Notes under the pieces: generated by a model | The model's input: the letters and a program-made list of their open reading frames with translations, nothing else | Database searches by the model: none | What the model was told of the DNA's origin: nothing | Shown here: positions 18,241 through 64,000 of the stretch, in pieces | Numbering within the stretch: the first letter of the stretch is position 1 | Layout: each line of letters starts with the position of its first letter | From: Isurus oxyrinchus | Lineage: Eukaryota | DNA length: 64,000 nucleotides | Reading direction: 5' to 3' | NCBI GenBank assembly: GCA_026770705.1 | Contig: JANJGN010000052.1 | Span: 3,844,001 to 3,908,000 of the forward strand | Translations under genes and position numbers: made by a program

Positions 18241-18500
18241 TGACTTGGAGACACTGTGTTGGGTGGAAGACTGGCTTCACTAAACAGGGTCCTGAGGACC
18301 ATGAGCCAATGTAGAATGAACTTGTCCACTCCTGTGTCCAGGATTCTCTTCCATCCATTGTGAAACCTTGGGGAGATCCCTGTGTGTCCTGTAGATGGTC
18401 CACACTGCAGCCACTGTGCCCCAGTGATGGACGGGGTGGATATTGAGTCTAGTGGATCTACAAACCAACCAGAGTTAAATATTGATATTTCTCTCCCCAG

Positions 18501-18869
18501 TTGGACTGTCACAAGAGTGGAAAGGTGACACTCCACGAGAGGTGACAGCGCAGGAAGATTCGTGTGTACAGATTCCATGTCATTACAGTTATCCATCACA
18601 TTTGGAAAGCCAACCACGAGTCGGAGTCTGGTTTAATAATGAGAATCAGATTCCTGGATCTCCCATTGCCTTTCACTCCAAGGATCACAGTCACGAGTTA
18701 CCACGGTTCCACCATCGGACCCGGCTGTCTGGAGACCTGAAAGATGGCGACTGTTCCCTGATTATAAACAACATCAGACGGGAAGATGCAGGACCTTATT
18801 TCTTCAGGATAGAATTTGACAGCAGTAATAGTTACAACTACTATCCTGTAACCCAGCTTCACGTTTCTG
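18501..18869 (+). CDS. Gene B Siglec V-set (sialic-acid-binding) domain exon, intact
   Basis: 369 nt, phase 1-1. Hallmarks: CVQIPCHYSYP, W, GDCSLII (Siglec-type B-E intrasheet Cys), DAGPYFFRIE with the essential Arg at 18806-18808 and no F-strand Cys. Confidence 0.95.
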
Positions 18870-19269
18870 GTAAGTGCTGTGTTATAATTACTCAACAATT
18901 CACATTCAACACTCAATGGGAATTAACACAAACTGTGACGTTTACATATTAACACAAAACACAGCTTATTATAACACACTGTCTGATTCTCAATAACCTG
19001 CTGATAGCTTCCAGTTCAGTCCTAAAGCAACCTCTAATACTCACTTTAATATCAATGATTAAATGTATTGACTGTGTCCATCAAAGTTATCAGGTTATCC
19101 ACTCTCATCGATCTCTCTAATCCTGTTTAAAATAATTTCCTGATCATTGTAACCTCTCAGTTCTGATATCATCCTTGTAAAAGTGCTTTCTCTTGTGGGA
19201 CTGTGATAACTATTTGAACTGATGCTTCACGTTATATTTCTCTAAAAGGATCCATTCTCTGTCTGTTAG

Positions 19270-19566: not shown

Positions 19567-19779
19567 GTAAGTATGGACATCCTTCATTATACATTCGCTG
19601 GAACAGTCTATATTGTGCACAGCAGGATCCCATAGAAAGGTATTCTGATGAGAACCAGATCATCTGTAGTTTAGGGAAAAACACTAACCAGAAAACAGTT
19701 AATGACAGTTTCTGAACATTAACACTGGAGCTTTTTTTTCCAGCCAAGAAGCTGATAGAGCAGAGCATCATTCACAATA

Positions 19780-21626: not shown

Positions 21627-21629
21627 CAC

Positions 21630-37949: not shown

Positions 37950-39900
37950 GAAGGGGAGCCAATCAATCGGGCTGCTTTGTCCTGGATGGTGTCGAGTTTC
38001 TTGAGTGTTGTTGGAGCTGCACTCATCCAGGCATGTGGAGAGTATTCCATCACACTCCTGACTTGTGCGTTGTAGATGGTGGACAGGCTTTGGGGAGTCA
38101 GGAGGTGAGTTACTGTCTGCAGGGTTCCCAGCCTCTGACCTGCTCTTGCAGCCACAGTGTTTATATGGCTGGTCCAGTTCAGTTTCTGCTCAATGGTAAC
38201 TCCCAGGATGTTGATATTGGGGGATTCATTGATGGTAATGCCATTGAATGTCAAGGGGCTATGGTTATGAATGGTCTGTGGAATACTCTGGTACAAAATT
38301 TCAACACTCGGACTCCAGATGCAATATTCAAGTGGTTCCTTTATTAGGCATGTGGGGAGCAAACGCTGGGCAGTCCAGGTGCTTCTCCATCGAGGTTCAA
38401 ATGAGCACAGTTTATATATTTTTACTCTCAGTTACAAGGTAATGGTATTAGTTAGACAAAGGCCACAGCACAATGACCCTCCGGTGGGCTGATAATTGTG
38501 TTCTTGTACAGTAATTACAGGGCAGAGACTGGCTATTGTCCTTTTGAGACAGCAAAGAATCTATGTTTGTTCGATACAAAAGGTTTCTGGGGGCTGACTG
38601 GATGTGGTTCAAGGCCATCGGACGGTGTGAAATAACCTTCCCCATTTCTTGATTAAGTCACCCAGTGTCCTTGTGTGTGTGTCTCCCATTTCCTCATTGC
38701 AAATTTCCAACTGAGCCCTTAGTACAGGTTTTTAAGTTTTCACGTAAGGATGTGTACGCTTTGGCGCCCTAGCTGCTGGTCCTGGCTGGCTCTTGAACAT
38801 AAATCCAAATTTTCTGCACCTTCAATTAGATTCTCTCTTGTTGGAGCTGGTCATTGCCTGGTACTTGTGTGGCATGAATGTTACTTGTCACCTGTCAGCC
38901 CAAGCCTGGATGTTGTCCAGGTCTTGCTGCATTTGGACATAACTTGCTTCAGTATCTGAGGAGCTGTGAATGGTGCTGAACATTGTGCAAATATCAGCAA
39001 ACATCCCCACTTCTGACCTTATGATGGAAGGAAGGTCATTGATGAAGCAGTTGAAGATGTTTGAGCCTAGGACACTACCCTGAGTAACTCCTGCAGTGAT
39101 GTCCTGGAACTGAGATGATTGACCCCCAATAATCACAACCATTTTCCTTTGTGCTGGGTATGACTCCAAGCAGCGGAGAGTTTTCCCCCGATTCCCATTG
39201 ACTCCAGTTTTGCTCGGGCTCCTTGATTTGCCACACTCAGTCAAATGCTGCCTTGATGTCAAGGGCAGTCCCTCTCACCTCTGGAGTTCAGCTCATTTGT
39301 GCATGTTTGAACCAAGGCTGTAATGAGGCCAGGAGCTGAATGATCCTGGTGGAACACAAACTGAGCGTCAGTGAGCAGGTTCTTGCTAAGCAGGTGCTGC
39401 TTGCAAGCGCTGTTGATGACCCCTTCCATCACTTTAGTAATGATCAAGAATAGACTGCTGGGGAATTAGCTGGGTTGGATTTGTCCTGCTTTTTGTGTAC
39501 AGAACGTACCCCATAGCCGGGTAGTTGCCAGTGTTGCAGCTGTACTAGAAAATTCCAGAAAAGCTTGGCTAGGGGCGCAGCAAGTTCTGGAGCACAAGTC
39601 TTCAGTACTATTGCCAGAATATTGTCAGGGCCTGGAGCCTTTGCAATATCCAGTGCCTTCAGCCCTTTCTTGATGTCACGTGGAATTAATCGAATTGGCT
39701 AAAGATTGGCATCTCTGATGCTGGGGACCTCAGGAGGAGGCCGAGATGGATCAGCCACTCAGCACTTCTGGCTGAAGATTGTTGCGCATGCTTCAGTCTT
39801 GTCTTTTGCACCGATGTGCTGGGCTCCTCCATCATTGAGGATGGGGATATTTGTGGAGACTCCTCCTCCAGTGAGTTGTTTAATTGTCCACGACTGGATG
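37950..39900 (-). mobile_element. HER1-like LINE ORF2 (RT) fragment, interrupted at ~38280-38835
   Basis: GVTQGSVLG..IFNCFINDLP...MFAD (RT core); NILGVTIEQKLNWTSHIN...VRSVMEYSP. Confidence 0.85.
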
Positions 39901-42295: not shown

Positions 42296-42629
42296 CACGC
42301 TCATAAAGACAGACACAAACACAGTCACGTGAGGTGAATAGTGTCGATGTATTTAAGGGGAAGCTGGATAAACACACGAGGGAGAAATGAATAGAAGGAT
42401 ATGGTGATGGGGTGAGATGGAGAAGGGGTGGGCGGAGACTCGTGTGGAGCAGAAACACCAGCATGGAGCAGATGGGCCAAATGGCTTCTTTCCCTGCTGT
42501 AAAACGCAGGTAAAGTTTCAGTTGGAATTAATGAACAGGGCCTGTGTTAAATAGATTGCTAAGCAGTAGATAAGGAGGGGAGAGGCTGTGGCATGGTGCA
42601 GGATGACCTTGCGTGAATGAGGACAGGGT

Positions 42630-42746
42630 CTAATATCTACAGCAGATACCACAAGTCTCATTTGGTTCTCTCCAATTACAGCAGTTACAGCAGAATCTGC
42701 AGTGCCGCTGTCTGCCCATTCTCTTCTGGCACAGCAGTAAGGAGCC
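42630..42746 (-). CDS. hamp: Hepcidin-like exon 3
   Basis: ttttccag|GGC...; GSLLLCQKRMGRQRHCRFCCNCCNWREPNETCGICCRY*. Confidence 0.9.
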   Translation of the reverse strand, partial: GSLLLCQKRMGRQRHCRFCCNCCNWREPNETCGICCRY

Positions 42747-45700
42747 CTGGAAAAGCAGGAGCACAATAGGTGAGAACATTCCGGAAAGAAAGAAGGCACC
42801 GCCTCCCTTTGACTCTGGCATCATTTCAATCAGGCGCGTCATTGGAAGGAGGATGGCGCATTTCTCTAGCACCTTTCCCCTCCTCAGGATGGCCCAAAAT
42901 GTTCAACAGCTGATGGAAGGACTTTTTCTGAAGTGAGCTCACCGCTGTAATGTAGGAAACGCAGCAGGCAATTCACGCACAGCAAGATCCCACAAACAGA
43001 AATGTGATAATGGCCCCGATTTTCAGTTTTTTACCAATGTCAGTTGAGGGATAAATGTTTGCCCCAGGAAAGCGGACATAACTCCACCCCATCCAGCCCC
43101 CACCACCCCCTCCACACATACCCCCCAACTCCTGACGCACTTCATCTAAATTGTGGCCATGGAATCCTCTATATCCACCTGAGAGGGCAGATTGGTTGCC
43201 CCAGTTTAATGTCTCATCTGAAAGACAGCGCCTTCAACAGTGCAGCACCCCCTCAGTACTGACCCTCCGACTGTGCAGCACTCCCTCAGTAAGGACTCTG
43301 ACAATGCAGCACATCCTCAGTACTGACCCTCCAACAGTGCAGCACTCCCTCAAGACTGACCCTCTGACAATGCAACACTCCCTCAGTACTAACCCTCCGA
43401 CTGTGCATCCCCCCGCCGGTACTGACCCTTCGACAGTGCAACACTCCCTCAAGACTGACCCTCTGACAATGCAGCACTCCCTCAGTACTGACCCTCTGAC
43501 AATGCAGCACTCCCTCAGTACTGACCCTCTGACAATGCAGCACTCCCTCAGTACTGACCCTCTGACAATGCAGCACTCCCTCAGTACTGACCCTCTGACA
43601 ATGCAGCACACCCTCAATACTGACCCTCCGATAGCTCGGTCATTCCTCAATTACGCCTGGTGGTCCTTTTAATTCAGAGCTGAGAGTCCCAGAGAATCGA
43701 GCAGACACCCTGAACTGACTCTTGCAGTGCAAGTACTGGGAGCGCGCTGGTCATTATCATGCTGCTGTCTGTGGGATCTTACTGTGCGCCAATGGCTGAT
43801 TCTTTTCCCACATTACATCAGTGACCTCACATGAAAGAAAAAAGCACTTGATTGTCTGCGAAACACTTTGGGACGTCCTGATGTGTTGGAAGGCGCTAGA
43901 GAAATGCAAGTCCTCTTTGTCTTTCACTCGATCCTCTAAGGTGTCTGTTGATTAACCAGCCTCTCGGTGTTTGATGTAGGCCTGGTTATAAACAGGTAGA
44001 AGGATCAAATATCAAAAGTGCTTTGGCTGACAGTCAAACCGATTGTGCATTCGGAGAGATTAGATACGGTCTGCACACAATGACTCCAGTCTCTGGCACT
44101 GACTGCTGCCTGGGGACTCCCTTCCACATAACACTCACAACTTGCATTTACACAGCGCCTCTGACATTGCAAAATGTCCCAGCCCACATAACCGGAGCGT
44201 AAATCAGAGAGAAGTCTAACACTGAGTCACATATGGAGATATTAGGGATAGGTGACCAAAAGCTTGGTCAAAGATGTCAGTTTTTAAGGAACGTCTTAAA
44301 GGAGAGAGAGAGAGAGAGAGGCAGAGAGGTTAAGGGAGGGTATTCCGGAGCTCAGGGCCCCAGGAAGCTGAAGGCACGGCCTCCAATGGTGGAGCGATGG
44401 GAATCAGGGGGACCCGGGAGATGCAGTAATGTCAGAGATTTTGGAGGAACATCGGGACCGGAGGAGGTGTTCTCCTGCTCCATATCTCTCTCTCTCTTCC
44501 TCTCATCCACTCCTCCTCTCCCTGTCTCTCTCTCTCCTACTCTTCCGCTCAATTGCCCTCTCTCCCAATCTTTCTCTCCTCTCTCCCTTTTCCTGTCTCT
44601 CTCCCTCTCTCTCCCTGTCTCCTTCTCCCACTCTGTATCTCTCCCTCTCTCTCACACTATTTTTGTACCTTTCGCTCACTCTGTAACTCTCCCTTTCCTG
44701 TTAATTTCTCTCTCTTGGACAATCTCTCTTCCCTTTTCACTTTCCCTCACTCTGCATCTCTTCTTTAATTTCTCCCTCTGTCACTCTCTCCCACCTATGT
44801 TCTTTCCCTTTCACCCCTCCCCGTCCCACTCTCTGTCTCTCTCTTCCAATCCCTCCCTCCCCCATTCCATCCCTCTCTCCGACTCTCGACTCCCAGCCTC
44901 TCTTTAACCCACTCCCAGGCTGGATCAGTCTCCCTCTCACTATTCCCGGCGTGGGTTACATTTAAAATTCCTGTGGGGATATGTTCACTTCCTTGGAATT
45001 GTCTCTTCCCAGCTTTGCAAAAAAAGGAGGGGGGGGGGGGCTCGATTTCAAACATGCCTCCTGAGTATAACCGAGACAGACTGCCACTGAAATCAGCTTG
45101 AAATCAGAAAACTTTCTGTGGAAGAAACGAGCAGGGAGAAACCTTAAAATAAGGAATGAATTTCCACCTACCGTGTCCGGGGAATCCACAGATTTCTCAA
45201 TCGTCGAAGAACCTAAAGCAGTGTCAACCTGCAAAAAGAAAGAATTTATCAGGGAGAAAGTGAGAGGAGGATTGAGGGAGAGGGAGAGAGAGAGAGAGAG
45301 GTACAGGAGAGAGAGGGGGAGGAGGACAGACTTGCATTTCTCTAACGCCTTTCACCACATCCCAAAGCATTTCACAGCCACTGAAGGATGTTTTTGAAGT
45401 GCACTCACACTGTAGGAAATGTGGCAGCTGATTTGTGCACAGCAAGATCCCACAAATAGCAATGTGATCATGGCCTAGATCATCTGTTTTTGGTGATGTT
45501 GGGTGAGGGATAAATATTGGTGCCAGGACACCGGGGAGAACACCCCCTGCTCTTCCTCCAAATAGTGGCTGTGGGATCTTTCACACCCGCCCGAGAGGGC
45601 AGACGGGGGACTCGGTTTAATGTCTCATTCAACATTGTTGTGCTCCCTCAGTACTAACCCTTTGACACTGCAGCACTCCCTTAGTATTAACCCTTCGATA

Positions 45701-47507
45701 GTGCTGCGCTCCCTCAGTACTGTCCCTCCGTCAGTGCAGCGCTCCCTCAGTACTGACCCTCCGACAGTGCAACACTTCCACAGTACTGACCTCCGACAGT
45801 ATAGCGCTCCCTCAGTACTGACCCTCCGTCAGTGCAGCTCTATTTCATTACTAACCCTTCGACACAGCAGCACTCCCTCAGTACTGACCTCCGACAGTAT
45901 AGCACTCCCTCAGTACTGTCCCTCCAATAGTGCAACACTTCCACACTACTGACCCTCTGAGAGTGCAGCACTCCCTCAGCACGGAGCATTGATCTACATT
46001 ATGGGACTGAATTCCCTGGAGTGAGACTCAGACCAGTGATTTAGGTAGGGGTGTGGGGGCTGGAGGAGGTTACAGAGATAGGGAGGGCTGTAGAGGCTGT
46101 AGGAGGTTACAGAGAAAGGGAGGGTTGTAAGGGCTGTAGGAAGTTACAGAGATAGGGAGGGTTGTAGAGGCTGTAGGAGGTTACAGAAATAGGGAGGTGA
46201 GTAGGGGCTGGAGGAGGTTACAGAAATAGGGAGGCTGTAGAGGCTGTAGGAGGTTACAGAGATAGGGAGGGTTGTAAGGGCTGTAGGAAGTTACAGAGAT
46301 AGGGGGGTTGTAGAGGCTGTAGGAGGTTACAAAGATGGGGGAGTTGTGGGGGCTGGAGGAGGTTACAGAGGTAGGGAGGTGTGTAGGGGCTGTAGGAGGT
46401 TACAGAGATGGGGTGGTTGTGGGGGCTGGAGGAGGTTACAGATGTAGGGAGGGTTGTAGAGGCTGGAGGAGGTTACCAAAATAGACACTGCTGTAGGGGC
46501 CACAGTATGTTACAGAGATAGGGAGAGTTATAGTGTGGAGAGGAGGTTATAGAGTTCAGGAGGATTGTAGGGGCTGGAGGAGGTTACAGTGATTGTGAGG
46601 GTTGTGGGGCCTGGAGGATTTTACAGAGATAGGGAGGGTTGTAGGGTCTGAAGCAGGTTACAGAGATAGGGAGGGTTGTAGGGTCTGGAGCAGGTTACAG
46701 AGATAGGGAGGGTTGTAGGGTCTGGAGCAGGTTACAGAGATAGGGAGGGTTGTAGGGTCTGGAGCAGGTTACAGTGATCGTGAGGGTTGTGGGGCCTGGG
46801 GGAGGTTACAGAGATAGGGAGTGCTGTGGGGACTGTAGGAGGTTACATAGATAGGGAGGGTTGTCGGGTCTGGAGGAGGTAACAGAGATAGGGAGGGTTA
46901 TAGGGACTGGAGGAGGTTACAGAGATAGGGAGGGTTGTCGAGACTGTAGGATGTTACAGAGATAGGGATTGTTGTAGGGGCTGGAGGAAGTTACAGAGAT
47001 AGGGAGGGTTGTAGGGGCTGGAGGAGGTTACAGAGATAGGGAGGGGTGTAGGGGCTGGAGGAGGTTACAGAGATAGGGAGGGTTGTACGGGCTGGAGGAG
47101 GTTACAGAGATAGGGAGGGTTGTAGGGGCTGGAGGAAGTTACAGAGATAGGGAGGGTTGTAAGGCCTGGTGGAGGTTACAGAGATAGGGAGGGTTGTACG
47201 GGCTGGAGGAGGTTACAGAGATAGGGAGTCGCTGAGGAGGGATTGAAAACAAGAATGAGAATTTCAGGGGAAATGACAGAAGGAAATGATGTTAAATTCA
47301 TAGAGGGCGACAATATTAAAGGCATGAACATAATAATATCAAACTGCGGAAGAGACCAGTCTATCTGGGTGGTAGACGTAGAGTCATGTGCAAGAAGCAC
47401 CTCACCCAGAGGGACATCTCTTAGCTTAACCTCGACAAGGAGAAGAAGTGACTCAGCTGCAGGGAGAGCAGCAAAGTCAGAGTGAACAAGACAAGTCGCC
47501 ATTTCAT
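42630..47507 (-). CDS. hamp: Hepcidin-like gene (3 exons: 47507-~47431 signal peptide, 45228-45172 pro-region, 42746-42630 pro-end plus mature peptide); possibly a pseudogene as assembled
   Basis: Exon 3 encodes CRFCCNCC...CGICCRY*, the 8-Cys hepcidin pattern at the C-terminus after QKR. Exon 2 is 57 nt, phase 0-0. Exon 1 MKWRLVLFTLTLLLSLQLSHFFS is a signal peptide. The exon-1 donor is 1 nt out of phase. Confidence 0.82.
43235..43635 (+). repeat. 33-bp minisatellite continuing from a SINE body
   Basis: Tandem units. Confidence 0.85.
44483..44905. repeat. CT-rich low-complexity tract
   Basis: Direct inspection. Confidence 0.8.
45172..45228 (-). CDS. hamp: Hepcidin-like exon 2 (pro-segment)
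   Basis: ttctttttgcag|GTT...ACG|gtaggt; the only open frame is VDTALGSSTIEKSVDSPDT; acidic/Ser-rich, size and phase as in hepcidin exon 2. Confidence 0.7.
45640..45985 (+). repeat. 33-bp minisatellite continuing from a SINE body
   Basis: Tandem units. Confidence 0.8.
46045..47230 (+). repeat. 37-bp G-rich minisatellite (gggagggttgtaggggctggaggaggttacagagata); reverse array at 49880-50460
   Basis: Tandem units. Confidence 0.9.
47431..47507 (-). CDS. hamp: Hepcidin-like exon 1 (signal peptide)
   Basis: ATG at 47507; basic n-region plus Leu-rich h-region; TATA-like box ~90 nt upstream. Confidence 0.7.
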
Positions 47508-47591
47508 CTGGGAGCTTCCCATCTCTGCCTGTCTCTTCTGATCTTCTGGCTCTGCTTTGATGCTTTGGTTTGTAACTACAGGAGCTTCCTG

Positions 47592-47806
47592 CTCTTATAC
47601 CTGAAACACTTGAAGGGGACAGCCGCGGGTGGGTAGCTGTGTGGTATCACACCCATTTCTGGATATTGCAGTGTCGATGTTCCCTGTCCCACTGGCCTGG
47701 GACCAGCAGTAAGGTCACTGGGACATTGACTGTCTGGCGCCGAGAACTATCAGTCCCTCCGCAACGCCCTTCACCTTGTGCAAATATGTGTTCATATTGA
47801 TGCAAC
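47592..47806 (-). promoter_or_regulatory. Hepcidin-like promoter: TATAAG (47599-47594), GTCT+GGCGCC BMP/SMAD element (47732-47741), C/EBP-like TTGTGCAA (47776-47783), TGATGCAA (47798-47805)
   Basis: Motif matches; BMP-RE GGCGCC and C/EBP sites are known HAMP promoter elements. Confidence 0.5.
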
Positions 47807-48800: not shown

Positions 48801-51239
48801 AGTTCCAGAATTGTTGTGTTTATTCGGCAACAGAATAACAGAGGAAGGTTTCCTCTCTGCCCTCTTCAGCCCCACTGGGAAGGTCAGGATGAGAAGGTTG
48901 GGCTGGGTCCCCTGTACTGGACACTCGCTGAATCTTCCAATGATAGTTCTGGGCTGGATTTCAAAACGCATAGACAAGGATTCAGTGTTCCATCACATTC
49001 TGCCTTTGTCTCTTTTCCTCTCGTTCTCTTTCTCTACCATCCTCTCTCTCTATCTATCTATCTTTCTCCTCATTCTCTCCTGCTTCATCTCTATCACTTT
49101 CTTTCTACTTCTTTGTGTGTCTCTGTCTGTCTCTCTCTCTCACTCTTTCTTTCCTTGTCCTTATCTCTTTCAGTGTCTCCCTCTTTCTCTCTCTCTCTCT
49201 CTCTCTAAATGTGCCCCTCTCTAACAGTTTGGCCCAGTACTCTTATTTCCCTGTTTTACTGGTGTTCCATTTGAAGGTATACAAGACCAGATCAGACCAG
49301 AATGTTTATTTTCCAGTGTTTACTGTGTTTTTTTCATTCTGGGTGTCTCTCGACTCTGTCTGTCCCTCTCTGTCCTTTTATTTCATTCTTTCATGTGATG
49401 TGGACATCACTGCCTAGGCCAGCATTTATTGCCCAACCCTAATTGCCCTTGTTCAGAGGCCACTTTTTAAAAGTGAACCACATTGCTGTGGGTCTGGAGT
49501 CACATGTTGGCCAGACCAGGTAAGGACAGCAGATTTCCCTCCCTAAAGGGCATTTATGACCCAAATACAAGAATCAGCAATGGTTTCCTGGTCATCATCG
49601 GACTTTTAATTCCAGGTTTTTATTGAGTTCAAATTCCACCAACTGCTGTGGTGGGATTCTAACCAGGGTCCCAGGACCATTACGCTGGGTCTCTGGATTA
49701 CTGGTCCAGTGAAAATACCATCAGGCCAACACCTCCCCACTCTTCCCTTCCACCATCTTTCACACTTGTTCTCTCTCTCTCTCACTCTCCTTCTCTCTTC
49801 CCCCTCTCTCAGTCTCTGTCTGTCTCTCAATCTCTCTATCGCTCTCTATCTCCTGGAGGCTCTCTCTCTGACTGTCTCCCTCCCTATATCTGTAACCTCC
49901 TCTCTCTGTCCCTTTCCTCCAGCCCATACAACCGTCCCCATCTCTGTAACCTCCTCCACCTCCCACAACCCTCCCTATATCTGTAACCTCCTCCACAAGC
50001 CCATACAATCCTCCCTATCCCTGTAACAACCTCCAGCCCGACAACACCCCTATACATGTCACCTCCTCTAGCCACTGTAACCCTAATAATCTCCCAAGCC
50101 TCCACCAGCCTTGACAATCCTGCCCATCTCTGTAACATCCTCCAACCACCACAACCCTCCCTATTTCTGTAATCTCTTCCAGTCCCTACAACCCTCCCTA
50201 TCTCTACAACCTGCTCCACCCCCTGCGACTCGCCCTATCTCTGTGTCATCCTCCAGCCCCTACAACCCTCCCTATACCTGTAACCTCCTCCAGCCCCTAC
50301 AACCCTCCCTATCTCTGGAACAGCTTCCAGCACCTACAACCCTCCCTATCTCTGTAACCTCCTCCAGCCCCTACAACACTCCTTATCTCTGTAACCTCCT
50401 CCAGCCCCTACAACCCTCCCTATCTCTGTAACCTCCTCCAGCCCCTGTAACCCTCCCCATCTCTTGAAGGGTTCTCAAAATTTCCAACTGTCAAGGAACC
50501 CTGGGTTGGTGAGCGTGACCCCTGACCTCTCCTAGTGCAATTTAGTTAGGGTTTGGGGGTGGGACAAGGATAAGGGCATTAGTAGCGTGATTCTCCCTCG
50601 TTATGCCGTGTGTTCCCCATTCTTAACTCAGTGTACTTTGTAAGTCTGTATAATCTCAGTGTCATCCTAATGTTAGAAGTTCATTTGTGACTTCAGTAAA
50701 CTCAGTTTTTGTCTTGCACCAAAACCAGTTGTCTGCTGCACTTTGTGACAAGCCCCGAATAAGTCCAAGGTCTAGAACCCAGGGATTGGGAGTGATTCAG
50801 ACGGCTCAGAAGTCGCAGGTGAAGCTGACACACACCACCACACCCTACAAGGGGCTGAATGGCCTCCTCCTGTTCCTGTGTAATGGGCTTCAGTGGCTGA
50901 ATTGCCTCCTCCTGTTCCTGTATAACGGACATAAGTGGCAGAATGGCCTCCTCCTGTTTCTGTGTAACAGTCTTGAGGGGGCTGAATGGCCTTCTCCTGT
51001 TCCTGTGTAACAGTCTCGAGGGGGCTGAATGGGCCTCTTCCTGTTCCTGTGTAACAGGCTCGAGGGGACTGAATGGCCTCCTCCTGTTCCTGTGTAACAG
51101 TCTCGAGGGGGCTGAATGGCCCCCTTCTGTTCCTGTGTAACAGGCTCGACGGGCTGAATGGCCTCCTTCTGCACTGTAAACTTGTTGTGATACTGTAACT
51201 GCCTCTTTGGTTTCATTCAGCTGAATCTTCAGCTCTTCA

Positions 51240-53222: not shown

Positions 53223-53319
53223 TTTCTCACACAGATGAAGATGAAGATTCCAGCCAGGAAAACACTCAACATGATCCCAGCCGTGAACAATCCTACTGTC
53301 CATTTACTGGAGTCTCTAC
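53223..53319 (-). CDS. Gene D transmembrane exon
   Basis: Reverse complement of 3441-3537. Confidence 0.9.
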
Positions 53320-55108
53320 CTGTAAAAACAGCCATTAATTACTGCACTACAGGTTTACAATGATGCTCCGATGTATCTCGAGAAGCGATACACTCACTCA
53401 GTGTTTAAATACTCATTCTCGGGCAATGCTGACATTTATTGTCCATCCCTAGTTTCCCCTTGAGAAGGTGGTGGGGAGTCTTCCTCCTGAACCACTGGTT
53501 TGTCCCAAACTGGGAGACCAGTTCAGAGGGCAGGTAAGAGTTAACCATGCTGGTGTCTGAGACTGGAGTCACATCCACATCGAGACATGCTTCCCTCCCT
53601 AAAGGGTATGTAGTCTCTACACATGTAACAACCAACCTCACTGAAATAATCAACTATCAGGTCATTATCACACGGTAGTTTGCGGGATCTTGCTGTGCAC
53701 AAATCAGTACCTGTGTTTCCTACATTACAAAAGTGTGCTCACTTCGATAATGCTTCACTGGCTGTTGAATGTTTAGTAATTTCTAAGCAATTTATGAATA
53801 CAAGTGTTGCATTTCAAAGTAATCCATGTTACATTTATATATAATATTTATCAATTAAAGAATGAGAAGTTCAGCAATTAAAAGGGTTGTTCAGGACAGT
53901 TAGAGAGAGAAAGGTCTTCAAGCACGGAGATTGGAAACGAAGACCTGACAGCCTTGTCCTGACAACCATTGAAGGAGAAACTGAGAGCAAAAACAGAAAG
54001 GGAGAGGAAAAATTGGGTGTGTGGATAACGTGGACTGAGCGAGGATTGAAGAAAACTGGATTAAAAACAACACGATCCCAATGGTTCCACGGAGACCACG
54101 GAGACAACAAACAAACAAATGTATCTCCACACTCACGTTCCACAGTGATGGTTATGAACCCCTCCACTGCTCCATGTTCATTCTCTGCCACACACTGATA
54201 GTCTCCAGTGTCCCTGGATGTAACGTGAGGAATCACCAACCACACCTCATTGTTGGAACTTGTTCTGTTCATTGGGACATTAAGATGTCGCCACGTCAGG
54301 TTAGAAGCTGGGAAGCTCTCGACAGAGCAGATTATCATTGTAGAATTCCCCTCAATTATATTGATCGATGAAGCGTTAATCATATCAAGAGAAGTAAATG
54401 AGAGATTCTGTGGAGCATCTAAGAACAAATCAAGTGTTTAAAAGTGAGCAAGCACAGTTTACAGCAAGACTCCATGCATCATCTCTCTGTATCTGATGTC
54501 TGTATGCATAGCCAGGTCCCTCCACTCCATATAACTTCCATTGACAAATTTATAGTGGGCACTGCCTATGTAAACAGTCAAACTGCAGTTACATTCTCCC
54601 AACAGTAGAGGTGCTGTCCACCTAGAATGGAAGAAACTTTCACATCCTCAGGATATACACAAGGGCTTGACAGGCAATGATTGTATTTGATTGATGGAGC
54701 ACTGAGGGGTAAATCTACAATTCTCTGTTCAGGAGGTTGCTCATCCAATTCAGGGTCTTGTTGATCTGGAGTTTACCTTCCTTCAACACAGAATCAGAGC
54801 TGATACCGAGACTCCAGTGCAGCACTGAGAGAGGACAGGGAACTCACACATGTGTTTGTGTTTGTGTGTTTTAGTGTGTTTGTGTTTCTGCACAAGAGAG
54901 TATGTTTATGTGTGCGTGTGTGTATGTGTTTGTGCATGTGTGCATGTGCCTGTTTGTATACATCTGTGCATGAGTGAGTGTGTGCATGTGTATGTCTATG
55001 TGTGTGCACATGTGACTGTGTGTGTGAGTTGAGTGTGTGTGTGTTTCTGTGTATGTGTTTCAACATGCATCACTGTGTGTGTAAGTGTGCGTGTATGTGT
55101 CTACACAT

Positions 55109-55159
<51 letters not shown>

Positions 55160-57433
55160 TGATGTTGAAGTTTGCAGTAACTCACGTTCCACAGTGATGG
55201 TTATGAACCCCTCCACTGCTCCATGTTCATTCTCTGCCACACACTGATAGTCTCCAGTGTCCCTGGATGTAACGTGAGGAATCACCAACCACAGCTCATT
55301 GTTGGAACTTGTTCTGTTCATTGGGACATTAAGATGTCGCCACGTCAGGTTAGAAGCTGGGAAGCTCTCGACAGAGCAGATTATCACTGCAGAATTCCCC
55401 TCAATTATCTTGATCGATGAAGCGTTAATCATATCAAGAGAAGTAATTGATGGGTTCCGTGGTGCATCTAAATACAAATAAAGGTTTCATTGTGAGCAAA
55501 CACAGTGCACAGCAAGACTCCATGATACATCTCTCTCTATTTGGTGTCTATGTGCATTTCAAGGTTTCTGTCCTGTTTTAAGTTTCTATGTCAACTTTTA
55601 TAATGGTCACTGCCGGCGTTTTTCTTTTTGTACATTCATGGGAAGTGGCTGTATCTATCTAGAGCAGCATTTATTACCCATCCCTAATTGCCCTTGAGGA
55701 GGTGGTGGTGAGTTTTTCACCCCCACAGGATTCCCAGCCTCTGACCGGCTCCTGTAGCCACAGTATTTATGGCCGGTCCAGTTAGTTGTTTGGTTAACAC
55801 CCCCCAGGATGTTGATTGTGGGGGATTCAGTGACCGTAAACTCACTGAACATCAAGGGGAGATGGTTAGATTCTCTCTTGTTGGACATGATCACTGCCTG
55901 GTGCTTGTGTGGTGTGAACATTACTTGTCATTTCTCAGCCCAAGCTGAGTGTTGCTCAGTTCTTGCTGCGTGTGGATATGTAAACTGTCACGCTGTAATT
56001 ACAGCCTTCCACCAGAGGAGACACTGTCGGGCTAGGAGAAAAGAAAATGTCTTTCACATCATCAGGATGTTCACAGGGATTTGACAGTGGAGGAATTGCT
56101 TTAGAATAATGCGGTATTGAGTGATAAACCTACAATTCTCTGTGCAGGGGGCTGCTCGTCCAATACAGGGTCTTGTTCAGCTGATGTCGTCAGTGTTTCA
56201 GAGCAGAATCTGGAGCAACACTCCAGTGCAGCACAGGGAGAACAGACAACTCACACATGTCTGTGTGTGTGTGTGAGCAAGCACACGTGTGATTCTGTAT
56301 GTATGCTTCTGTGTGTGAGCATGCAGGCGTGCACACCTGTGCACATGTGGGATTCCACATGAATGCTTGTTTGTGTGCACGTGTCTGTGTGTGTGTGTTT
56401 GTGTGAGTGTGTGTGTATATATGAGAGTAATGTTGAAGTTTGTGTTAACTCACATTCCACAGTGATGGTTATGAACCCCTCCACTGCTCCATGTTCATTC
56501 TCTGCCACACACTGATAGTCTCCAGTGTCCCTGGATGTAACGTGAGGAATCACCAACCACAGCTCATTGTTGGAACTTGTTCTGTTCATTGGGACATTAA
56601 GATGTTGCCACGTCAGGTTAGAAGCTGGGAAGCTCTTGACAGAGCAGATTATCACTGCAGAATTCCCCTCAATTATATTGATCGATGAAGCATTAATCAT
56701 TTCAAGAGAAGTAAATGAGAGATCCTGTGGTGAATCTAAGAACAAATCAAGTGTTTAATGTGAGCAAGCAAAGTGCACAGCAAGACTCCACGCATCATCT
56801 CTCTGTATCTGATGTCTGTATGCATTGGCAGGTACCGTCCCTCCATATAACTTCCACTGTCAAATTTATAATGGGCACTGCCTATGTAAACAGTCAAACT
56901 GCAGTTACATTCTCCCACCAGTAGAGGTGCTGTCTACCTAGAATGAAAGAAACTTTCACATCCTCAGGATTTTGCCAAGGGATTTACGGGAATGAATTGT
57001 ATTTGATTGATGGAGCACTGAGGGGTAAATCTACAATTCTCTGTTCAGGAGGTTGCTCATCCAATTCAGGGTCTTGATCTGGAGTTTACCTTCCTACAAC
57101 ACAGAATCGGAGCTGATATCGAGACTCCAGTGCGGCACTGAGAGAGTAGCGGGACCTCACGTGTCTGTATGTTTGTGTTTGTGTTTCTGCAGATGTGAGT
57201 GTGTTTGTGTGGGTATGCACACATGTGTCTGTGTGTGCATGTGTGTATGTGTTTGCGCAAATGTGCGTGTGTCTTTGTGTATATTTCTGTGCATAAGTGA
57301 ATGTGTGTACATGTGTATGTGTATGTGTGTGCACGTGTGAGTGTGTGTGTGTGAGTTGAGTGTGTGTATGTTTCTGTGTAGGTTTTTGCACATGTATGAC
57401 TGTGTGTAAATGTGCATGTATGTGCCCCCACAT

Positions 57434-57493
<60 letters not shown>

Positions 57494-59384
57494 AAGATGT
57501 TGAGGTCTGTGTAACTCACGTTCCACAGTGATGGTTATGAACCCATCCACTGCTCCATGTTCATTCTCTGCCACACACTGATAGTCTCCAGTGTCCCTGG
57601 ATGTAACGTGAGGAATCACCAACCACAGCTCATTGTTGGAACTTGTTCTGTTCACTGGGACATTAAGATGTCGCCACATTAGGTTAGAAGCTGGGAAGCT
57701 CTTAACAGAGCAGATTATCACTGCAGGATTCCCCTCAATTATATTGATCGATGAAGCGTTAATCATACCAAGTGATGTAATTGAGACATCCTGTGGTGCA
57801 TCTAAAAACATAGAAAAATTTTAATGTGAGCAAATATAGTGCACAGCAAGACTCCATGCATCATGTCTCTGTATCTGATGTCTGAATGCATTTCCAGGTA
57901 ACTTCCCTCAGGATAAGGTCTTATGGCACATTTATAATTGACACTGCCTATGTAAACTGTCACACTGCAGTTGCATTCTCCCACCAGTAGAGGTGTTGTC
58001 CATTTAGAATGAAAGAAGCTTGCTTTCACATCCTCAGGATTTCGCAAAGGGCTGGACAGGCAATGAATTTTATTTGATCGAGGGAGCATTTAGGGGTAAA
58101 TCTACATTTCTCTGTTCAGGAGGTTGCTCCATCCAATTCAGGGTCTTGTTGATCTGGAGTTTACCTTCCTTCAACACAGAATTGGAGCTGACACCGAGAC
58201 TCCAGTGCAGCACTGAGAGAGGACAGGGAACTCACGCGTGTGTATGTGTGTGTTTGTGTTTCTGCACAAGTGAGCGTGTTTGTGTGTGTATGCACACATG
58301 TGTCTGTGTTTGCACTTGCGCATGTGTCTGTGTGTCTACGTCTGTCCATGAGTGAGAGTATGTGCATGTGTGTGTCTATGTGTGGGCATGAATATGTGTG
58401 TGTTTGAGATGGGTGTGTATTTTCCTGTGTATGTGTTTGTGTGTGTATGACTGTGTGTGTATAATTATGCATGTGTGTGCCTACAGGTGTCTGTCTGGGT
58501 GTGTGTGTGTGTCTGTGTGCGTGTGCGTGTGCGTGTGTGTGTGTGTGTCTGTAGGTGATGTTGAAGTTTGCAGTAACTCACGTTCCACAGTGATGGTTAT
58601 GAATCCCTCCACTGCTCCATGTTCATTCTCTGCCACACACTGATAGTCTCCAGTGTCCCTGGATGTAACGTGAGGGATCACCAACCACAGCTCATTGTTG
58701 GAACTTGTTCTGTTCATTGGGACATTAAGATGTCGCCACGTCAGGTTAGAAGCTGGGAAGCTCTCGACAGAGCAGATTATCACTGCAGAATTCCCCTCAA
58801 TTATATTGATCGATGAAGCATTAATCATTTCAAGAGAAGTAAATGTGAGATTCTGTGGAGCATCTAAGAACAAATCAAGTGTTTAATGTGAGCAAGCAGC
58901 GTGCACAGCAAGAATCCATGCATCATGTCTCTGTATCTGATGTTGGAATGCATTTCCAGGTACCTTCCCTCATGAAAAAATACTGTCACATTTATAATGG
59001 GCACTTCCTCTGTAAACTGTCACACGGCAGTTGCTTTTTCCCACCAGTAGAGTTGCTAACCCTCTAGAATGAAAGAAACATCCTTTAACACTCTCAAGAT
59101 GTCCCCAAAGGCTTGACAGGCAATGAATTGTATTTGATCGATGGAGCACTGAGGGCTAAATCTACATTTCTCTGTTCAGGAGGTTGCTCATCCAATTCAG
59201 GGTCTTGCTGATCTGGAGTTTACCTTCCTTCAGCACAGAATCAGAGCTGATACCAAGACTCCAGTGCAGCACTGAGAGAGGAGAGGCCGCTCATACTTGT
59301 GTGTGTTTGTGTGTGTGTGTGTGTGTACTTCTGCGCAAGTGAGTTTGTATTTGTGTGTATGCGCGTGTCTGTCAGCGCATATGT

Positions 59385-59417
<33 letters not shown>

Positions 59418-60609
59418 TGTGTGTGTATGTCTGTGCTTGAGGGAGTGTGTGTGCATATGTGTCTCTATGTGTGCGCATGAATGATTGTATGTGTGAGTTG
59501 AGTTTGTGTGTGTTTCTGTGTATGTGTTTGAACGTATGTTTGTGTGTAAGCGTGCATGTTTGTGTCTACACATGAGTGTTTTTGCATGTGTGAGTGTGTG
59601 TGTGTGTGAGTGATGTTGAAGTCTGTGTACACTCACATTCCACAGTGATGGTTATGAATCCCTCCACTGCTCCATGTTCATTCTCTGCCACACACTGATA
59701 GTCTCCAGTGTCCCTGGATGTAACGTGAGGAATCACCAACCACAGCTCATTGTTGGAACTTGTTCTGTTCATTGGGACATTAAGATGTCGCCACGTCAGG
59801 TTAGAAGCTGGGAAGCTCTTAACAGAGCAGATTATCACTGCAGGATTCCCCTCAATTATATTGATCGATGAAGCGTTAATCATATCAAGAGAATTAATTG
59901 AGAGATTCAATGGTGCATCTAAATATATGGAAAGATTTTAATGTGAGCAAATATAGTGCACAGCAAGACTCCATGCATCATGTCTCTGTATCTGATGTCT
60001 GAATGCATTTCCAGGTAACTTCCCTCAGGATAAGGTCTTATGGCACATTTATAATTGACACTGCCTATGTAAACTGTCACACTGCAGTTGCATTCTCCCA
60101 CCAGTAGAGGTGTTGTCCATTTAGAATGAAAGAAGCTTGCTTTCACATCCTCAGGATTTCGCAAAGGGCTGGACAGGCAATGAATTGTATTTGATTGATG
60201 GAGCACTTAGGGGTAAATCTACAATTCGCTGTTCAGGAGGTTGCTCATCCAATTCAGGGTATTGTTGATCTGGCGTTTACCTTCCTTCAACACAGAATTG
60301 GAGCTGACACCGAGACTCCAGTGCAGCCCTGAGAGAGGAGAGGGAGCTCACGCGTGTGTATGTGTGTGTCTGTGTTTGCTTTTCTGCACAGGTGAGTGTG
60401 CTTGTGTGTGTATGCACACCTGTATCTGTGTGTGCGCATGCACGCGTTTCTGTGTGTCTACGTCTGTCCATGAGTGAGTGAATGTGCATGTGTGTGTCTA
60501 TGTTTGGGCATGAATATGTGTGTGTGATTGAGATGGGTGTGTATTTTCCTGTGTATGTGTTTGTACGTGTATGAATGTGTGTATATAATTATGCATGTGT
60601 ATGCTTACA

Positions 60610-60654
<45 letters not shown>

Positions 60655-63600
60655 GCGTGTCTGTATGTGTGTGTGTGTGTGTGTGTGAGAGATGTTGAAG
60701 TTTGCAGTAACTCACGTTCCACAGTGATGGTTATGAATCCCTCCACTGCTCCATGTTCATTCTCTGCCACACACTGATAGTCTCCAGTGTCCCTGGATGT
60801 AACGTGAGGAATCACCAACCACAGCTCATTGTTGGAACTTGTTCTGTTCATTGGGACATTAAGATGTCGCCACGTCAGGTTAGAAGCTGGGAAGCTCTCG
60901 ACAGAGCAGATTATCACTGCAGAATTCCCCTCAATTATATTGATCGTTGAAGCGTTAATCATATCAAGAGAAGTAAATGAGAGATTCTGTGGTGCATCTA
61001 AAAACATATAAAGATTTTAATGTGAGCAAGCACAGTGCACAGCAAGACTCCATGCATCATCTCTCTGTATCTGATGTCTGAATGCATTTCCAGGTTCCTT
61101 CCCTCAGGATAAGAACTTATTTCACATTTACAATGGGCACTGCCTATGTAAACTGTCACACTGCAGTTACATTCTCCCACCAGTGGAGGTGTCCATCTAG
61201 AATGCAGGAAACTCCCTTTCAGATCCTCAGGATGTCCCCAAGGGCTTCAAAGGCAATGAATTGTGTTTGATCGATGGAGCACTGAGGGGTAAATATACAT
61301 TTCTCTGTTCAGGAGGTTGCTCCATCCAGTTCAGGGTCTTGTTGATCTGGAGTTCACCTTCCTTCAACACAGAATCAGAGCTGATACCGAGACTCCAGTG
61401 CAGCACTGAGAGAGGAGAGGGTACCCACACGTTTTTGTCTGTGTATGTGTGTGTTGGCTTGTGTGTGTGTATGTTTNNNNNNNNNNNNNNNNNNNNNNNN
61501 NNNNNNNNNNNNNNNNNNNNNNNNNNNNNNNNNNNNNNNNNNNNNNNNNNNNNNNNNNNNNNNNNNNNNNNNNNNNNNNNNNNNNNNNNNNNNNNNNNNN
61601 NNNNNNNNNNNNNNNNNNNNNNNNNCACTCACATTCCACAGTGATGGTTATGAACCCCTCCACTGCTCCATGTTCATTCTCTGCCACACACTGATAGTCT
61701 CCAGTGTCCCTGGATGTAACGTGAGGAATCACCAACCACAGCTCATTGTTGGAACTTGTTCTGTTCATTGGGACATTAAGATGTCGCCACATCAGGTTAG
61801 AAGCTGGGAAGCTCTCGACAGAGCAGATTATCACTGCAGAATTCCCCTCAATTATATTGATCGATGAAGCGTTAATCATATCAAGATAAGTAATTGAGAG
61901 ATTCTGTGGTGCATCTAAAAACATATAAAGATTTTAATATGAGCAAATATAGTGCACAGCAAGACTCCATGCATCATGTCTCTGTATCTGATGTCTGAAT
62001 GCATTTCCAGGTACCTTCCCTCAGGATAAGAACTTATTTCACATTTACAACGGGCACTGCCTATGTAAACTGTCACACTGCAGTTACATTCTCCCACCAG
62101 TGGAGGGGTCTATCTAGAATGCAGGAAACTCCCTTTCAGATCCTCAGGATGTCCCCAAGGGCTTCAAAGGCAATGAATTGTATTTGATCGATGGAGAACT
62201 GAGGGGTAAATCTACAATTCACTGTTCAGGAGGTTGCTCATCCAGTTCAGGGTCTTGTTGATCTGGAGTTTACCTTCCATCAACAAAGAATCGGAGCTGA
62301 TACCGAGACTCCAGTGCAGCACTGAGAGAGGAGAGGGTACCCACACGTTTTTGTGTGTGAATGTGTGTGTTGGCTTGTGTGTGTGTATGTTTCTGCACAA
62401 CAAGGATCTGTGTGTGCACGCACGCATGTGTGTTTGTGTGTGTGCGCACGTGTGTCTGTCTGTGCGTGTGTGTGTGTGTGAGTTAAGGTTGTGTGTCCTT
62501 CTGCATGTGTGTCTGTTTGTGTGTGTGTGTGTGTGTGAGTGTGTGTGTGTATGTGTGTGTGTGTGTGTGAGTGATGTTGAAGTTTGCAGTAACTCACGTT
62601 CCACAGTGATGGTTATGAACCCCTCCACTGCTCCATGTTCATTCTCTGCCACACACTGATAGTCTCCAGTGTCCCTGGATGTAACGTGAGGAATCACCAA
62701 CCACAGCTCATTGTTGGAACTTGTTCTGTTCATTTGGACATTAAGATGTCGCCACGTCAGGTTAGAAGCTGGGAAGCTCTCGACAGAGCAGATTATCACT
62801 GCAGAATTCCCCTCAATTATGTTGATCGATGAAGCGTTAATCATATCAAGAGAATTAATTGAGAGATTCTGTGGTGCATCTAAAAACAAATAAACATCAA
62901 TTAACTTAAACTGACTGTGAAGCACTTTGAAATACACTGAGAATGTGAAAGGTTTGATATCAATGCAGGTTCTTTCACCACAAAGCCCGTAATCCAGGCA
63001 GACAAATCAGTTCAGTATTGAGGGAGTGCTGCAATGACAGAGGGTCAGTACTGAGGGAGTGCTGCACTGTCAGTGTGTCAGTACTGAGGGAGTGCTGTAG
63101 TGTCAGACGGTCAGTACTGAGGGAGTGCTGCATTGTCAGTGTGTCAGTACTGAGGGAATGCTGCACTGTCAGAGGGTCAGTACTGAGGGAGTGCTGCACT
63201 GTCAGTGGGTCAGTACTGAGGGAGTGCTGCACTGTCAGATGGTCAGTAAAGAGGGGGTGCTGCACTGTTTGACGGTCAGAACTGAGGGGGTGCTGCACTC
63301 TCAGAGGGTCAGTACTGAGGGAGTGCTGCACTGCGAAGATTCAGTACTGAGGGGGTGCTGCACTGTCGAAGGGTCAGTAGTGAGGGAATGCTGCAGTGTT
63401 GGAGAGTCAGTATTCAGGGACTGCTGCAGTGTCAGAGGTGAATTTGTATCAATTAAAGACTATTGATTTGTTGCTAAACACAATGCAGTTGTGGGATCTT
63501 GCAGTGTACTATGTGGAGCTTTCTAGCTAATGTAGATGGAAGGGAGTCGGTACTTACCTTGCACAGTTAGTACGAGGGTCCGCTCCGATGAAACAGATGG

Positions 63601-63854
63601 ATATCTCACTCTGCAGCTGAGAGTGTGTCCGTGGTGTTTGAGTGATGGGATCAGGGTCAGAACAGAAGTATAGGTCAGAGTGACACCATGCTGAGTTACA
63701 GTGTTTGAGACTGATCCAGGTACGTCAGTGGGAGTGTCCCTGGTTAAGACAGGTGCTGCTGTTCCATTGCACGTTGTGTTGAAGGTGCAGCTTACATCCA
63801 CACGCTTTCCTGCAATAATTTCAGCAGGGAATATCGTGGGTTTATCTGTGAAAT
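53223..63854 (-). CDS. Siglec-like gene D (5' end beyond window): D2 63854-63558; nine C2 exons 62879-62598, 61914-61633, 60997-60716, 59918-59637, 58863-58582, 57801-57520, 56735-56454, 55467-55186, 54418-54137; TM 53319-53223; no cytoplasmic exons found
   Basis: All exons are open with AG/GT boundaries. D2 is near-identical to gene B D2. The last three C2 exons, TM and introns are an inverted near-copy of gene A. Confidence 0.88.
63015..63435 (-). repeat. 33-bp minisatellite
   Basis: Tandem units; same intron position as the arrays in gene B. Confidence 0.85.
63558..63854 (-). CDS. Gene D Siglec domain-2 exon
   Basis: Reverse-complement homolog of 19270-19566; conserved Trp replaced by Arg. 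Confidence 0.9.
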
Positions 63855-64000
63855 CTAACAGACAGAGAATGGATCCTTTTAGAGAAATATAACGTGAAGC
63901 ATCAGTTCAAATAGAAATCACAGTCCCACAAGAGAAAGCACTTTTACAAGGATGATATCAGAACTGAGTTGTTTTAACTATCCTGATAGACTGTTAGACA

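What the first reader, a model, noticed from the sequence alone, without database searches (positions are those of the whole stretch)
42630..47507. Hepcidin-like gene embedded within the Siglec cluster
A three-exon prepropeptide gene ends in the 8-Cys hepcidin signature. It is visible in the ORF track only as the tail of an 80-aa ORF. In human, HAMP lies next to MAG and CD22 (USF2-HAMP-MAG-CD22). This anchors the expanded cluster to the ancestral MAG/CD22 locus and suggests hepcidin copies may be co-duplicated with Siglecs (inference).
Basis: partly seen in the sequence, partly recalled or inferred. Interest (0 to 1): 0.82.

Follow-up and report, generated by a model that had tools for sequence, protein, structure and literature searches.

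The report
Shark hepcidin gene copy among Siglecs
This is a real three-exon gene of the hepcidin (iron-hormone and defence peptide) family lying between Siglec-type immune-receptor genes, as HAMP does in mammals. Matching spliced RNA is extremely abundant, but this copy has a one-base fault at its first splice site and encodes an unusual long-loop peptide.

Summary
On the minus strand there is a three-exon hepcidin-family gene: exon 1 (47522-47430) encodes the signal peptide, exon 2 (45228-45172) the prodomain, and exon 3 (42746-42630) the cleavage site plus an 8-Cys peptide. Pfam's Hepcidin model matches exon 3 (E 6.6e-5, below the gathering score). The only solved structure matched is a bass hepcidin. 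The Cys pattern occurs once in the window and in none of 100 shuffles.

Public transcriptome-sized contigs of the same species cover just these three exons at depths of 10^4-10^5 and join them.

The reading frame holds only if exon 1 ends at 47430. Intron 1 then starts TT, not GT, and it looks like a +1 G>T change in AGG|GTAAGC. So this copy may be defective, with the RNA coming from sister copies.

The peptide lacks the ferroportin-binding N-terminus, has an 8-residue loop with an N-E-T sequon, and resembles teleost Hamp2. It is probably a defence-type hepcidin.

The neighbours are Siglec-like. The window holds one hepcidin copy, and a 96% inverted Siglec duplication stops short of it.

The scan has already reported this gene kind at many other places in the same genome, with the TT donor in two of them.

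The parts
47776..47783 (-). C/EBP-like palindrome TTGCACAA upstream of the gene (motif match only)
   Evidence: 1 hit vs 0.46 expected in 600 nt
47732..47741 (-). GGCGCC followed directly by AGAC, which resembles a BMP/SMAD-responsive element (motif match only)
   Evidence: 1 hit vs 0.11 expected
47594..47599 (-). TATA box (TATAAG), about 75 nt upstream of the first ATG
   Evidence: RNA depth is 0 (X1) in 47636-47800 and about 1.2e5 in 47452-47635
47430..47522 (-). Exon 1 coding part, 31 aa with a hydrophobic signal peptide. The first ATG is at 47522 and a second ATG at 47507. The 5' UTR extends upstream to about 47570 (inferred)
   Evidence: The joint 45228->47430 has depth 25037 in X2
47428..47429 (-). 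First two bases of intron 1 in the frame-keeping register. They read TT instead of GT: AGG|TTAAGC
45229..47429 (-). Intron 1. It contains a 37-mer satellite (46042-47228, 32 copies) and a 33-mer satellite (45643-45979), and ends in a good acceptor, tttctttttgcag
45172..45228 (-). Exon 2, 57 nt, 19 aa of prodomain (VDTALGSSTIEKSVDSPDT)
   Evidence: Depth is about 7e4 in the bin 45060-45243
42747..45171 (-). Intron 2, canonical GT..AG. It holds a 33-mer satellite (43237-43628), a CT-rich tract and SINE-like repeats
42630..42746 (-). Exon 3 coding part: 38 aa plus the TAG stop. It encodes the end of the prodomain, a KR / RQR basic site and the 8-Cys peptide
42633..42719 (-). Predicted 29-aa mature peptide if cut after KR (24 aa if cut after RQR). 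Net charge is +3. The loop between Cys5 and Cys6 has 8 residues and carries an N-E-T sequon
42331..42629 (-). 3' UTR. Its end is not fixed, because it runs into a repeat element and depth there may include other transcripts. There is no AATAAA; an AATACA lies at about 42349-42354
18479..18949 (+). Neighbouring gene: Siglec-type V-set exon (V-set and Ig_CD22 models) with the GPYFFRIE arginine motif. A C2-set exon follows at 19218-19712
53874..63906 (-). Neighbouring gene: a run of Ig C2-type exons of a Siglec-like gene. Its 3' end (about 52426) faces the hepcidin promoter

Best explanation
This is one copy of a multi-copy, very strongly transcribed hepcidin-family gene of a cartilaginous fish. 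It lies between Siglec-like receptor genes, as expected from the old HAMP-MAG/CD22 linkage.

The gene encodes an 88-aa prepropeptide in three parts: a signal peptide (exon 1), a short acidic prodomain (exon 2), and a basic processing site plus an 8-Cys peptide (exon 3).

Inferred mechanism: the peptide is secreted, a proprotein convertase cuts it after KR (or RQR), and it folds into a four-disulfide hairpin.

It lacks the Q/D-S/T-H-F/L-P/S-I/L N-terminus of the iron-hormone type. Its core (CRFCCNCC...CGICCRY) resembles teleost Hamp2, so it most likely acts as a cationic defence peptide rather than as the ferroportin ligand. The lengthened loop carries a possible N-glycan site.

In this assembly the copy has T instead of G at the first base of intron 1. 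The abundant in-frame mRNA is therefore more likely made by sister copies with identical exons, and this copy may be splice-defective.
For: Hepcidin family: Pfam PF06446 E 6.6e-5 on exon 3. The only PDB match is bass hepcidin, aligned as CRFCCNCC..PN..CG[IV]CCR[YF]. The Cys pattern occurs once vs 0 in 100 shuffles. The size and three-exon layout fit published hepcidin genes: 81-96 aa prepro, 19-31 aa mature, three exons (PMC3978493).

Transcription and splicing: depth is 6e4-2.4e5 on exon 3, 7e4 on exon 2 and 1.2e5 on exon 1, against 10-100 on unique intron. Joints were seen at 42745/6->45171/2 and at 45228->47430 (depth 25037). Intron contigs with 0 mismatches over 398 and 237 nt show the same species.

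Defence type: sea bass Hamp2 is HSSPGGCRFCCNCCPNMSGCGVCCRF, and only Hamp1 (QSHLSLC...) regulates ferroportin (PMC5665920).

Donor fault: the frame-keeping register AGG|TTAAGC matches the donor consensus at 6 of 9 places and misses at -2, +1 and +6, +1 being the invariant G. The GT one base upstream gives a stop at codon 36.

Several expressed sister sequences exist. One junction contig carries a different base at 45227, and one contig replaces the mature-peptide code (joint 42633->42717, depth 6460).

Siglec-like neighbours.
Against: The Pfam score is below the gathering threshold, and no homologue was retrieved from the large protein libraries. Those blanks reflect the 38-aa query and the word filter.

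None of the 40 differences listed by read laying falls in an exon, and intron contigs match this copy exactly. So this very copy may be transcribed and spliced at TT.

No joint using the upstream GT appears among the 15 listed (58 were not shown).

The tissue of the RNA runs is unknown. No function was tested. There is no canonical R-X-K/R-R furin site.
Confidence: 0.72

Rival explanations
1. The copy is fully functional. Intron 1 is a genuine non-canonical TT-AG intron, cut efficiently at AGG|TTAAGC, and this locus contributes to the abundant mRNA.
For: The only exon 1-exon 2 joints listed keep the G at 47430. The exons show no listed mismatch to the RNA, and exact-match intron contigs exist. 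Apart from +1, the donor fits U1 pairing well. Two other scan notes report the same TT in other copies, so it may be a shared, tolerated feature. All three exons are otherwise intact.
Against: A G at donor +1 is almost invariant in spliceosomal introns, and +1 G>T is a classic inactivating change (established knowledge). The mRNA does not contain the intron, so it cannot be assigned to this copy. Other scan notes call other copies intact, so canonical copies with the same exons may exist but I did not see their donors. Recent duplicates have had no time to decay.
Confidence: 0.17
2. The T at 47429 is an assembly or consensus error, or one allele of a polymorphism. The real gene has GT and is an ordinary intact hepcidin copy.
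For: It is a single base. The region is part of a multi-copy family where consensus polishing can mix copies. The RNA junction is exactly what a GT at 47429-47428 would give.
Against: The same base is reported in at least two other copies by other notes, which argues for a real inherited change. I saw no read evidence for G at this place. Intron 1 near the donor has almost no RNA depth, and the DNA-like runs X5 and X6 do not cover it.
Confidence: 0.1
3. This is not a hepcidin. The Cys-rich tail is a chance ORF or another small Cys-rich family, and exons 1-2 belong to a Siglec leader.
For: The Pfam score is under the gathering threshold. The large-library searches were blank.
Against: RNA joins the three exons in frame. 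There were 0 chance matches in 100 shuffles. Hepcidin is the only family hit in Pfam and the only hit in PDB. The exon layout and sizes are those of hepcidin genes.
Confidence: 0.01

Closest known systems
Vertebrate hepcidin (HAMP; Pfam PF06446)
   Same: Three exons, with the mature peptide in the last one. Signal peptide, prodomain and basic site are present. The eight Cys follow the pattern C-x2-CC-x-CC-...-C-x2-CC. The prepropeptide is 88 aa. RNA is very abundant. The gene lies beside Siglec/MAG-type genes.
   Different: It has no D/Q-T/S-H-F/L-P/S-I/L N-terminus. The loop between the CC pair and the sixth Cys is 8 residues, against 4-5 in the sea bass peptides, and carries an N-E-T sequon. 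The processing site is KR/RQR rather than R-X-K/R-R. There is an extra Cys in the prodomain. The Pfam score on exon 3 is below gathering.
Teleost Hamp2 (e.g. sea bass/striped bass hepcidin, PDB 1S6W; PMC5665920)
   Same: The core CRFCCNCC and the end CG[IV]CCR[FY] are shared. The iron-hormone N-terminus is absent. The gene is multi-copy. A defence role is presumed.
   Different: Hamp2 is described only from ray-finned fish (PMC3978493), so the likeness is probably parallel evolution and not orthology. The loop here is longer and may carry a glycan.
Hepcidin gene expansions in teleosts (e.g. Larimichthys crocea, PMC6240063)
   Same: Tandem or segmental amplification of hepcidin copies with diversified mature peptides.
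   Different: Here the copies are, by the scan's other notes, interspersed with amplified Siglec-like genes in a cartilaginous fish. I did not test this myself.

Membership tests
Hepcidin (HAMP, PF06446) | Eight cysteines in the pattern C-x2-CC-x-CC-xn-C-x2-CC at the C-terminus | tested here: met
   a single match in the window; 0 matches in 100 shuffles. n = 8 here.
Hepcidin (HAMP, PF06446) | Match to the family profile above Pfam's gathering score | tested here: inconclusive
23.6 bits, E 6.6e-5, cut-off 27, profile positions 21-52 of 53. Only exon 3 was scored.
Hepcidin (HAMP, PF06446) | Three exons and two introns, with signal peptide, prodomain and mature peptide in that order | tested here: met
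   RNA joints; exon borders; translations; rule taken from PMC3978493.
Hepcidin (HAMP, PF06446) | Prepropeptide of 81-96 aa and mature peptide of 19-31 aa | tested here: met
   31 + 19 + 38 = 88 aa. The mature peptide is 29 or 24 aa.
Hepcidin (HAMP, PF06446) | Canonical R-X-K/R-R convertase site before the mature peptide | tested here: not met
   The sequence reads CQKR|MGRQR|HC. It has a dibasic KR and an RQR, but no R at P4 of either.
Iron-hormone type hepcidin (HAMP1 / mammalian hepcidin-25) | N-terminal D/Q-T/S-H-F/L-P/S-I/L before the first Cys (the ferroportin-binding end) | tested here: not met
   The residues before the first Cys are MGRQRH. Compare Hamp1 QSHLSLC in PMC5665920.
Iron-hormone type hepcidin (HAMP1 / mammalian hepcidin-25) | Causes ferroportin internalisation | not testable with these tools
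   Needs a peptide assay.
Teleost Hamp2 lineage | Descent from the ray-finned-fish Hamp2 duplication | not tested
   No homologue set could be retrieved, so only motif likeness is available. Hamp2 is reported only in actinopterygians.
Intact spliceosomal gene | GT (or GC) at the start of every intron, in the register that keeps the frame | tested here: not met
   Intron 1 begins TT at 47429-47428. The GT one base upstream shifts the frame and gives a stop at codon 36. Intron 2 is GT..AG.
Siglec (neighbouring genes) | N-terminal V-set domain with the sialic-acid-binding Arg in a YFFR-type motif, followed by C2-set domains | tested here: met
   V-set 47.9 bits, Ig_CD22 36.6 bits, C2-set_2 33.6 bits. 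GPYFFRIE. Sugar binding was not tested.
Ancestral USF2-HAMP-MAG-CD22 block | USF2, MAG, CD22 or FFAR orthologues next to the gene | not tested
   None was identified in the 64 kb. The scaffold beyond the window could not be read. The mammalian FFAR-HAMP-USF2 linkage is cited from PMC4453067; the MAG/CD22 order is from my own knowledge.

The most novel reading that the evidence does not exclude
The hepcidin family of this shark is expressed at very high level from copies whose first intron really starts with TT. That would be an efficiently spliced TT-AG intron, kept through repeated duplication of a hepcidin-Siglec module.
Probability: 0.15. Interest if true: 0.6.

Novelty: new member of a known kind. 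Interest (0 to 1): 0.4.

Why it matters
It shows that the linkage of hepcidin with Siglec/MAG-type genes goes back to cartilaginous fish. It also shows that sharks, like many teleosts, carry diverged defence-type hepcidin copies besides any iron hormone.

For annotation, the gene is invisible to ORF-based tracks.

The one-base donor fault matters for counting working copies. If the TT site is really used, it would be a rare natural case of efficient non-canonical splicing.

The scan has already reported the same gene kind at several other places in this genome, so this window adds one more copy rather than a new discovery.

Tried and rejected
- The search for homologous proteins with the 80-aa ORF found no candidate sharing three words.
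- The search of protein representatives with the 38-aa exon 3 peptide gave 0 hits at E<=0.001 in 1.8e9 proteins. The query is too short for that library, so the blank says little.
- The protein-atlas search gave no usable hit.
- The AlphaFold2 single-sequence model of exon 3 had pLDDT 64 and was all helices, which is not credible for a four-disulfide hairpin. I did not use it and ran no fold search.
- A brute-force search for exon 2 by AG/GT and phase was built on the wrong phase and was useless among the satellite repeats. The RNA joints gave the true exon.
- A second hepcidin copy in the window: none found by blastn, tblastn or regex.
- Chance ORF, or a Siglec leader exon misassigned to this gene: rejected by the RNA joints.
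- The spliced 88-aa product was not sent to any search or folding tool. The only joined computation was a count of the first stop in the shifted frame, done inside a script.
Full report
**What is there**

The minus-strand ORF 42630-42872 (80 aa) ends in ...CQKRMGRQRHCRFCCNCCNWREPNETCGICCRY. A strong acceptor (ctcctgcttttccag) lies just before GGC at 42746.
- Pfam's Hepcidin model (PF06446) is the only family hit: E 6.6e-5, 23.6 bits, profile positions 21-52 of 53, below the gathering score of 27.
- Against all PDB sequences, the only match at E<=10 is hybrid striped bass hepcidin 1S6W (E 0.11). It aligns CRFCCNCC, PN and CG[IV]CCR[YF].
- The pattern C-x2-CC-x-CC-x(2-12)-C-x2-CC occurs once in the six-frame translation of the window and never in 100 locally shuffled windows.

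**Gene model from RNA**

One search for public runs gave four transcriptome-sized contig sets of one sample (X1-X4, organism A) holding a third to a little over half of the words of exon 3 (0.33-0.56). I laid X1, X2 and two runs of organism B on 42300-47800.

In X1 and X2 the summed contig depth is:
- 6e4-2.4e5 over exon 3;
- about 7e4 in the bin holding 45172-45228;
- about 1.2e5 over 47452-47635;
- 0-144 upstream of 47636;
- only 10-100 on unique intron sequence.

Joints link 42745/6 to 45171/2 (CT..AC on the plus strand, which is GT..AG on the minus strand) and 45228 to 47430 (depth 25037 in X2).

Intron contigs with no mismatch over 398 nt and 237 nt show that organism A is the species of the window. 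One of them crosses the exon 2 acceptor unspliced, so it is pre-mRNA. The exon/intron depth contrast and the joints show the material is RNA, although the run records do not say so. The tissue is unknown.

The resulting model, minus strand:
- exon 1 coding part 47522-47430, MGSSQMKWRLVLFTLTLLLSLQLSHFFSLSR;
- exon 2 at 45228-45172, VDTALGSSTIEKSVDSPDT;
- exon 3 at 42746-42633, followed by TAG.

That is 31 + 19 + 38 = 88 aa. A TATAAG lies at 47599-47594. The layout and sizes are those published for hepcidin genes: three exons, prepropeptide 81-96 aa, mature peptide 19-31 aa (PMC3978493).

The joined 88-aa product was not sent to any search or fold tool. The only joined computation was a stop-codon count inside a script.

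**The splice-site fault**

Exon 2 is 57 nt and exon 3 starts in phase 0, so exon 1 must end in phase 0, at 47430 (...TCG AGG). The RNA junction contigs do keep that G.
- In the window the next two bases are TT (47429-47428), giving AGG|TTAAGC.
- This register matches the donor consensus MAG|GTRAGT at 6 of 9 places and fails at -2, +1 and +6, +1 being the invariant G. It therefore looks like a G>T substitution in AGG|GTAAGC.
- The GT one base upstream (GAG|GTTAAG, 5 of 9) would shift the frame and stop at codon 36. No such joint is among the 15 listed, but 58 were not shown.

Because the intron is absent from mRNA, the abundant in-frame RNA cannot be assigned to this copy. At least two further transcript forms exist. 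One junction contig carries a different base at 45227. One contig of depth 6460 keeps the prodomain end and the 3' UTR but does not align over the mature-peptide code (joint 42633->42717). So several sister genes are expressed.

I judge a splice-defective copy with identical exons the most likely reading (about 0.55 within the accepted family call). True TT splicing and an assembly error or polymorphism are the alternatives. Two other notes of this scan report the same fault in other copies. That argues against a random error and leaves open a shared, perhaps tolerated, feature.

**What the peptide is like**

Cutting after KR gives a 29-aa peptide with net charge +3. Cutting after RQR gives 24 aa with net charge +1. 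Neither site is a canonical R-X-K/R-R.

The six residues before the first Cys are MGRQRH, not the Q/D-S/T-H-F/L-P/S-I/L end of iron-hormone hepcidins. The core equals sea bass Hamp2 (HSSPGGCRFCCNCCPNMSGCGVCCRF), and in sea bass only Hamp1 (QSHLSLC...) regulates ferroportin (PMC5665920).

The loop between the second CC pair and the sixth Cys has 8 residues, against 4-5 in the sea bass peptides, and holds an N-E-T sequon.

From these points I infer a secreted, convertase-processed, four-disulfide defence-type peptide. No function was tested. Hamp2 is described only from ray-finned fish, so the likeness is probably parallel evolution.

**Surroundings**

- A V-set exon at 18479-18949(+) scores with V-set (47.9 bits) and Ig_CD22 (36.6 bits) and carries the Siglec motif GPYFFRIE. 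A C2-set exon follows at 19218-19712.
- A decayed copy of the V-set exon lies at 31655-31969.
- Ig C2 exons run on the plus strand at 21-2887 and on the minus strand at 53874-63906.

So the hepcidin gene is flanked on both sides by Siglec-like genes. The 3' part of the right-hand gene (52426-53500) is an inverted 96.4% duplicate of 4334-3261, and the duplicated stretch stops 4.9 kb before the hepcidin promoter. Within this window, therefore, hepcidin was not carried along with the recent Siglec duplication, and there is only one hepcidin copy.

No USF2, MAG, CD22 or FFAR orthologue was identified here. The mammalian FFAR-HAMP-USF2 linkage is cited from PMC4453067. The order USF2-HAMP-MAG-CD22 is from my own knowledge.

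**What is known**

Hepcidin has been listed among nurse shark plasma proteins (PMC9207270). I found no paper in the held library describing shark hepcidin genes, their copy number or their linkage to Siglecs.

The scan's own notes report the same long-loop hepcidin beside Siglec-like genes at about 1.68, 1.78 and 2.57 Mb before this window and on other pieces of the genome. They also report a standard-looking hepcidin expressed in the same animal. I did not test those notes.

**Verdict**

This is a real hepcidin-family gene copy in the expected genomic neighbourhood, with very abundant matching spliced RNA, an atypical defence-type peptide and a one-base fault at the first donor. It is a new member of a known kind, already met elsewhere in this genome by the scan.

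**Limits**

- The large-library protein searches were blank for a 38-aa query.
- The single-sequence structure model was not usable.

Noticed in passing
window 42633-42717 (minus-strand exon 3): One X2 contig of depth 6460 aligns to the prodomain end and to the stop/3' UTR but not to the 83 nt that code for the mature peptide. It is probably a sister hepcidin mRNA with a different mature peptide.
   Followed up: no
window 47732-47783: Upstream of the TATA box lie a GGCGCC directly followed by AGAC (BMP/SMAD-element-like; 1 hit vs 0.11 expected) and a C/EBP-like TTGCACAA. No STAT TTCNNNGAA site occurs in the 600 nt.
   Followed up: partly
window 46042-47228 and 49899-50464: A 37-mer satellite (32 copies) fills half of hepcidin intron 1. 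An inverted block of the same satellite lies 2.7 kb upstream of the gene.
   Followed up: partly
window 43237-43628, 45643-45979, and also 4707-5116, 13030-13294, 19780-20741, 21628-22088, 29865-30067, 35901-36467, 63012-63438: A 33-mer satellite (GCACTCCCTCAGTACTGACCCTC... type) attached to a SINE-like element recurs throughout the window, including both hepcidin introns. It attracts very deep RNA contigs from elsewhere.
   Followed up: partly
window 52426-53500 vs 3261-4334: A 96.4% inverted duplication covers the 3' parts (TM exon and tail region) of the two outer Siglec-like genes. It ends abruptly at 52426/4334.
   Followed up: partly
window 18479-18949(+) and 31655-31969(+): The first is a Siglec-type V-set exon with GPYFFRIE. 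The second copy keeps the C-terminal half identical but has a scrambled N-terminal half, so it is probably a decayed or rearranged V exon.
   Followed up: partly
window 38891-39274(-): A reverse-transcriptase fragment (RVT_1, E 1.7e-5, below gathering), a retroelement remnant between the Siglec-like genes and hepcidin.
   Followed up: no
window 43980 and 45226-45407: Minor alternative joints in RNA contigs: 43980->45171 at depth 98, and 45226->45407 at depth 45. These are low-level alternative or cryptic splicing within the hepcidin introns.
   Followed up: no
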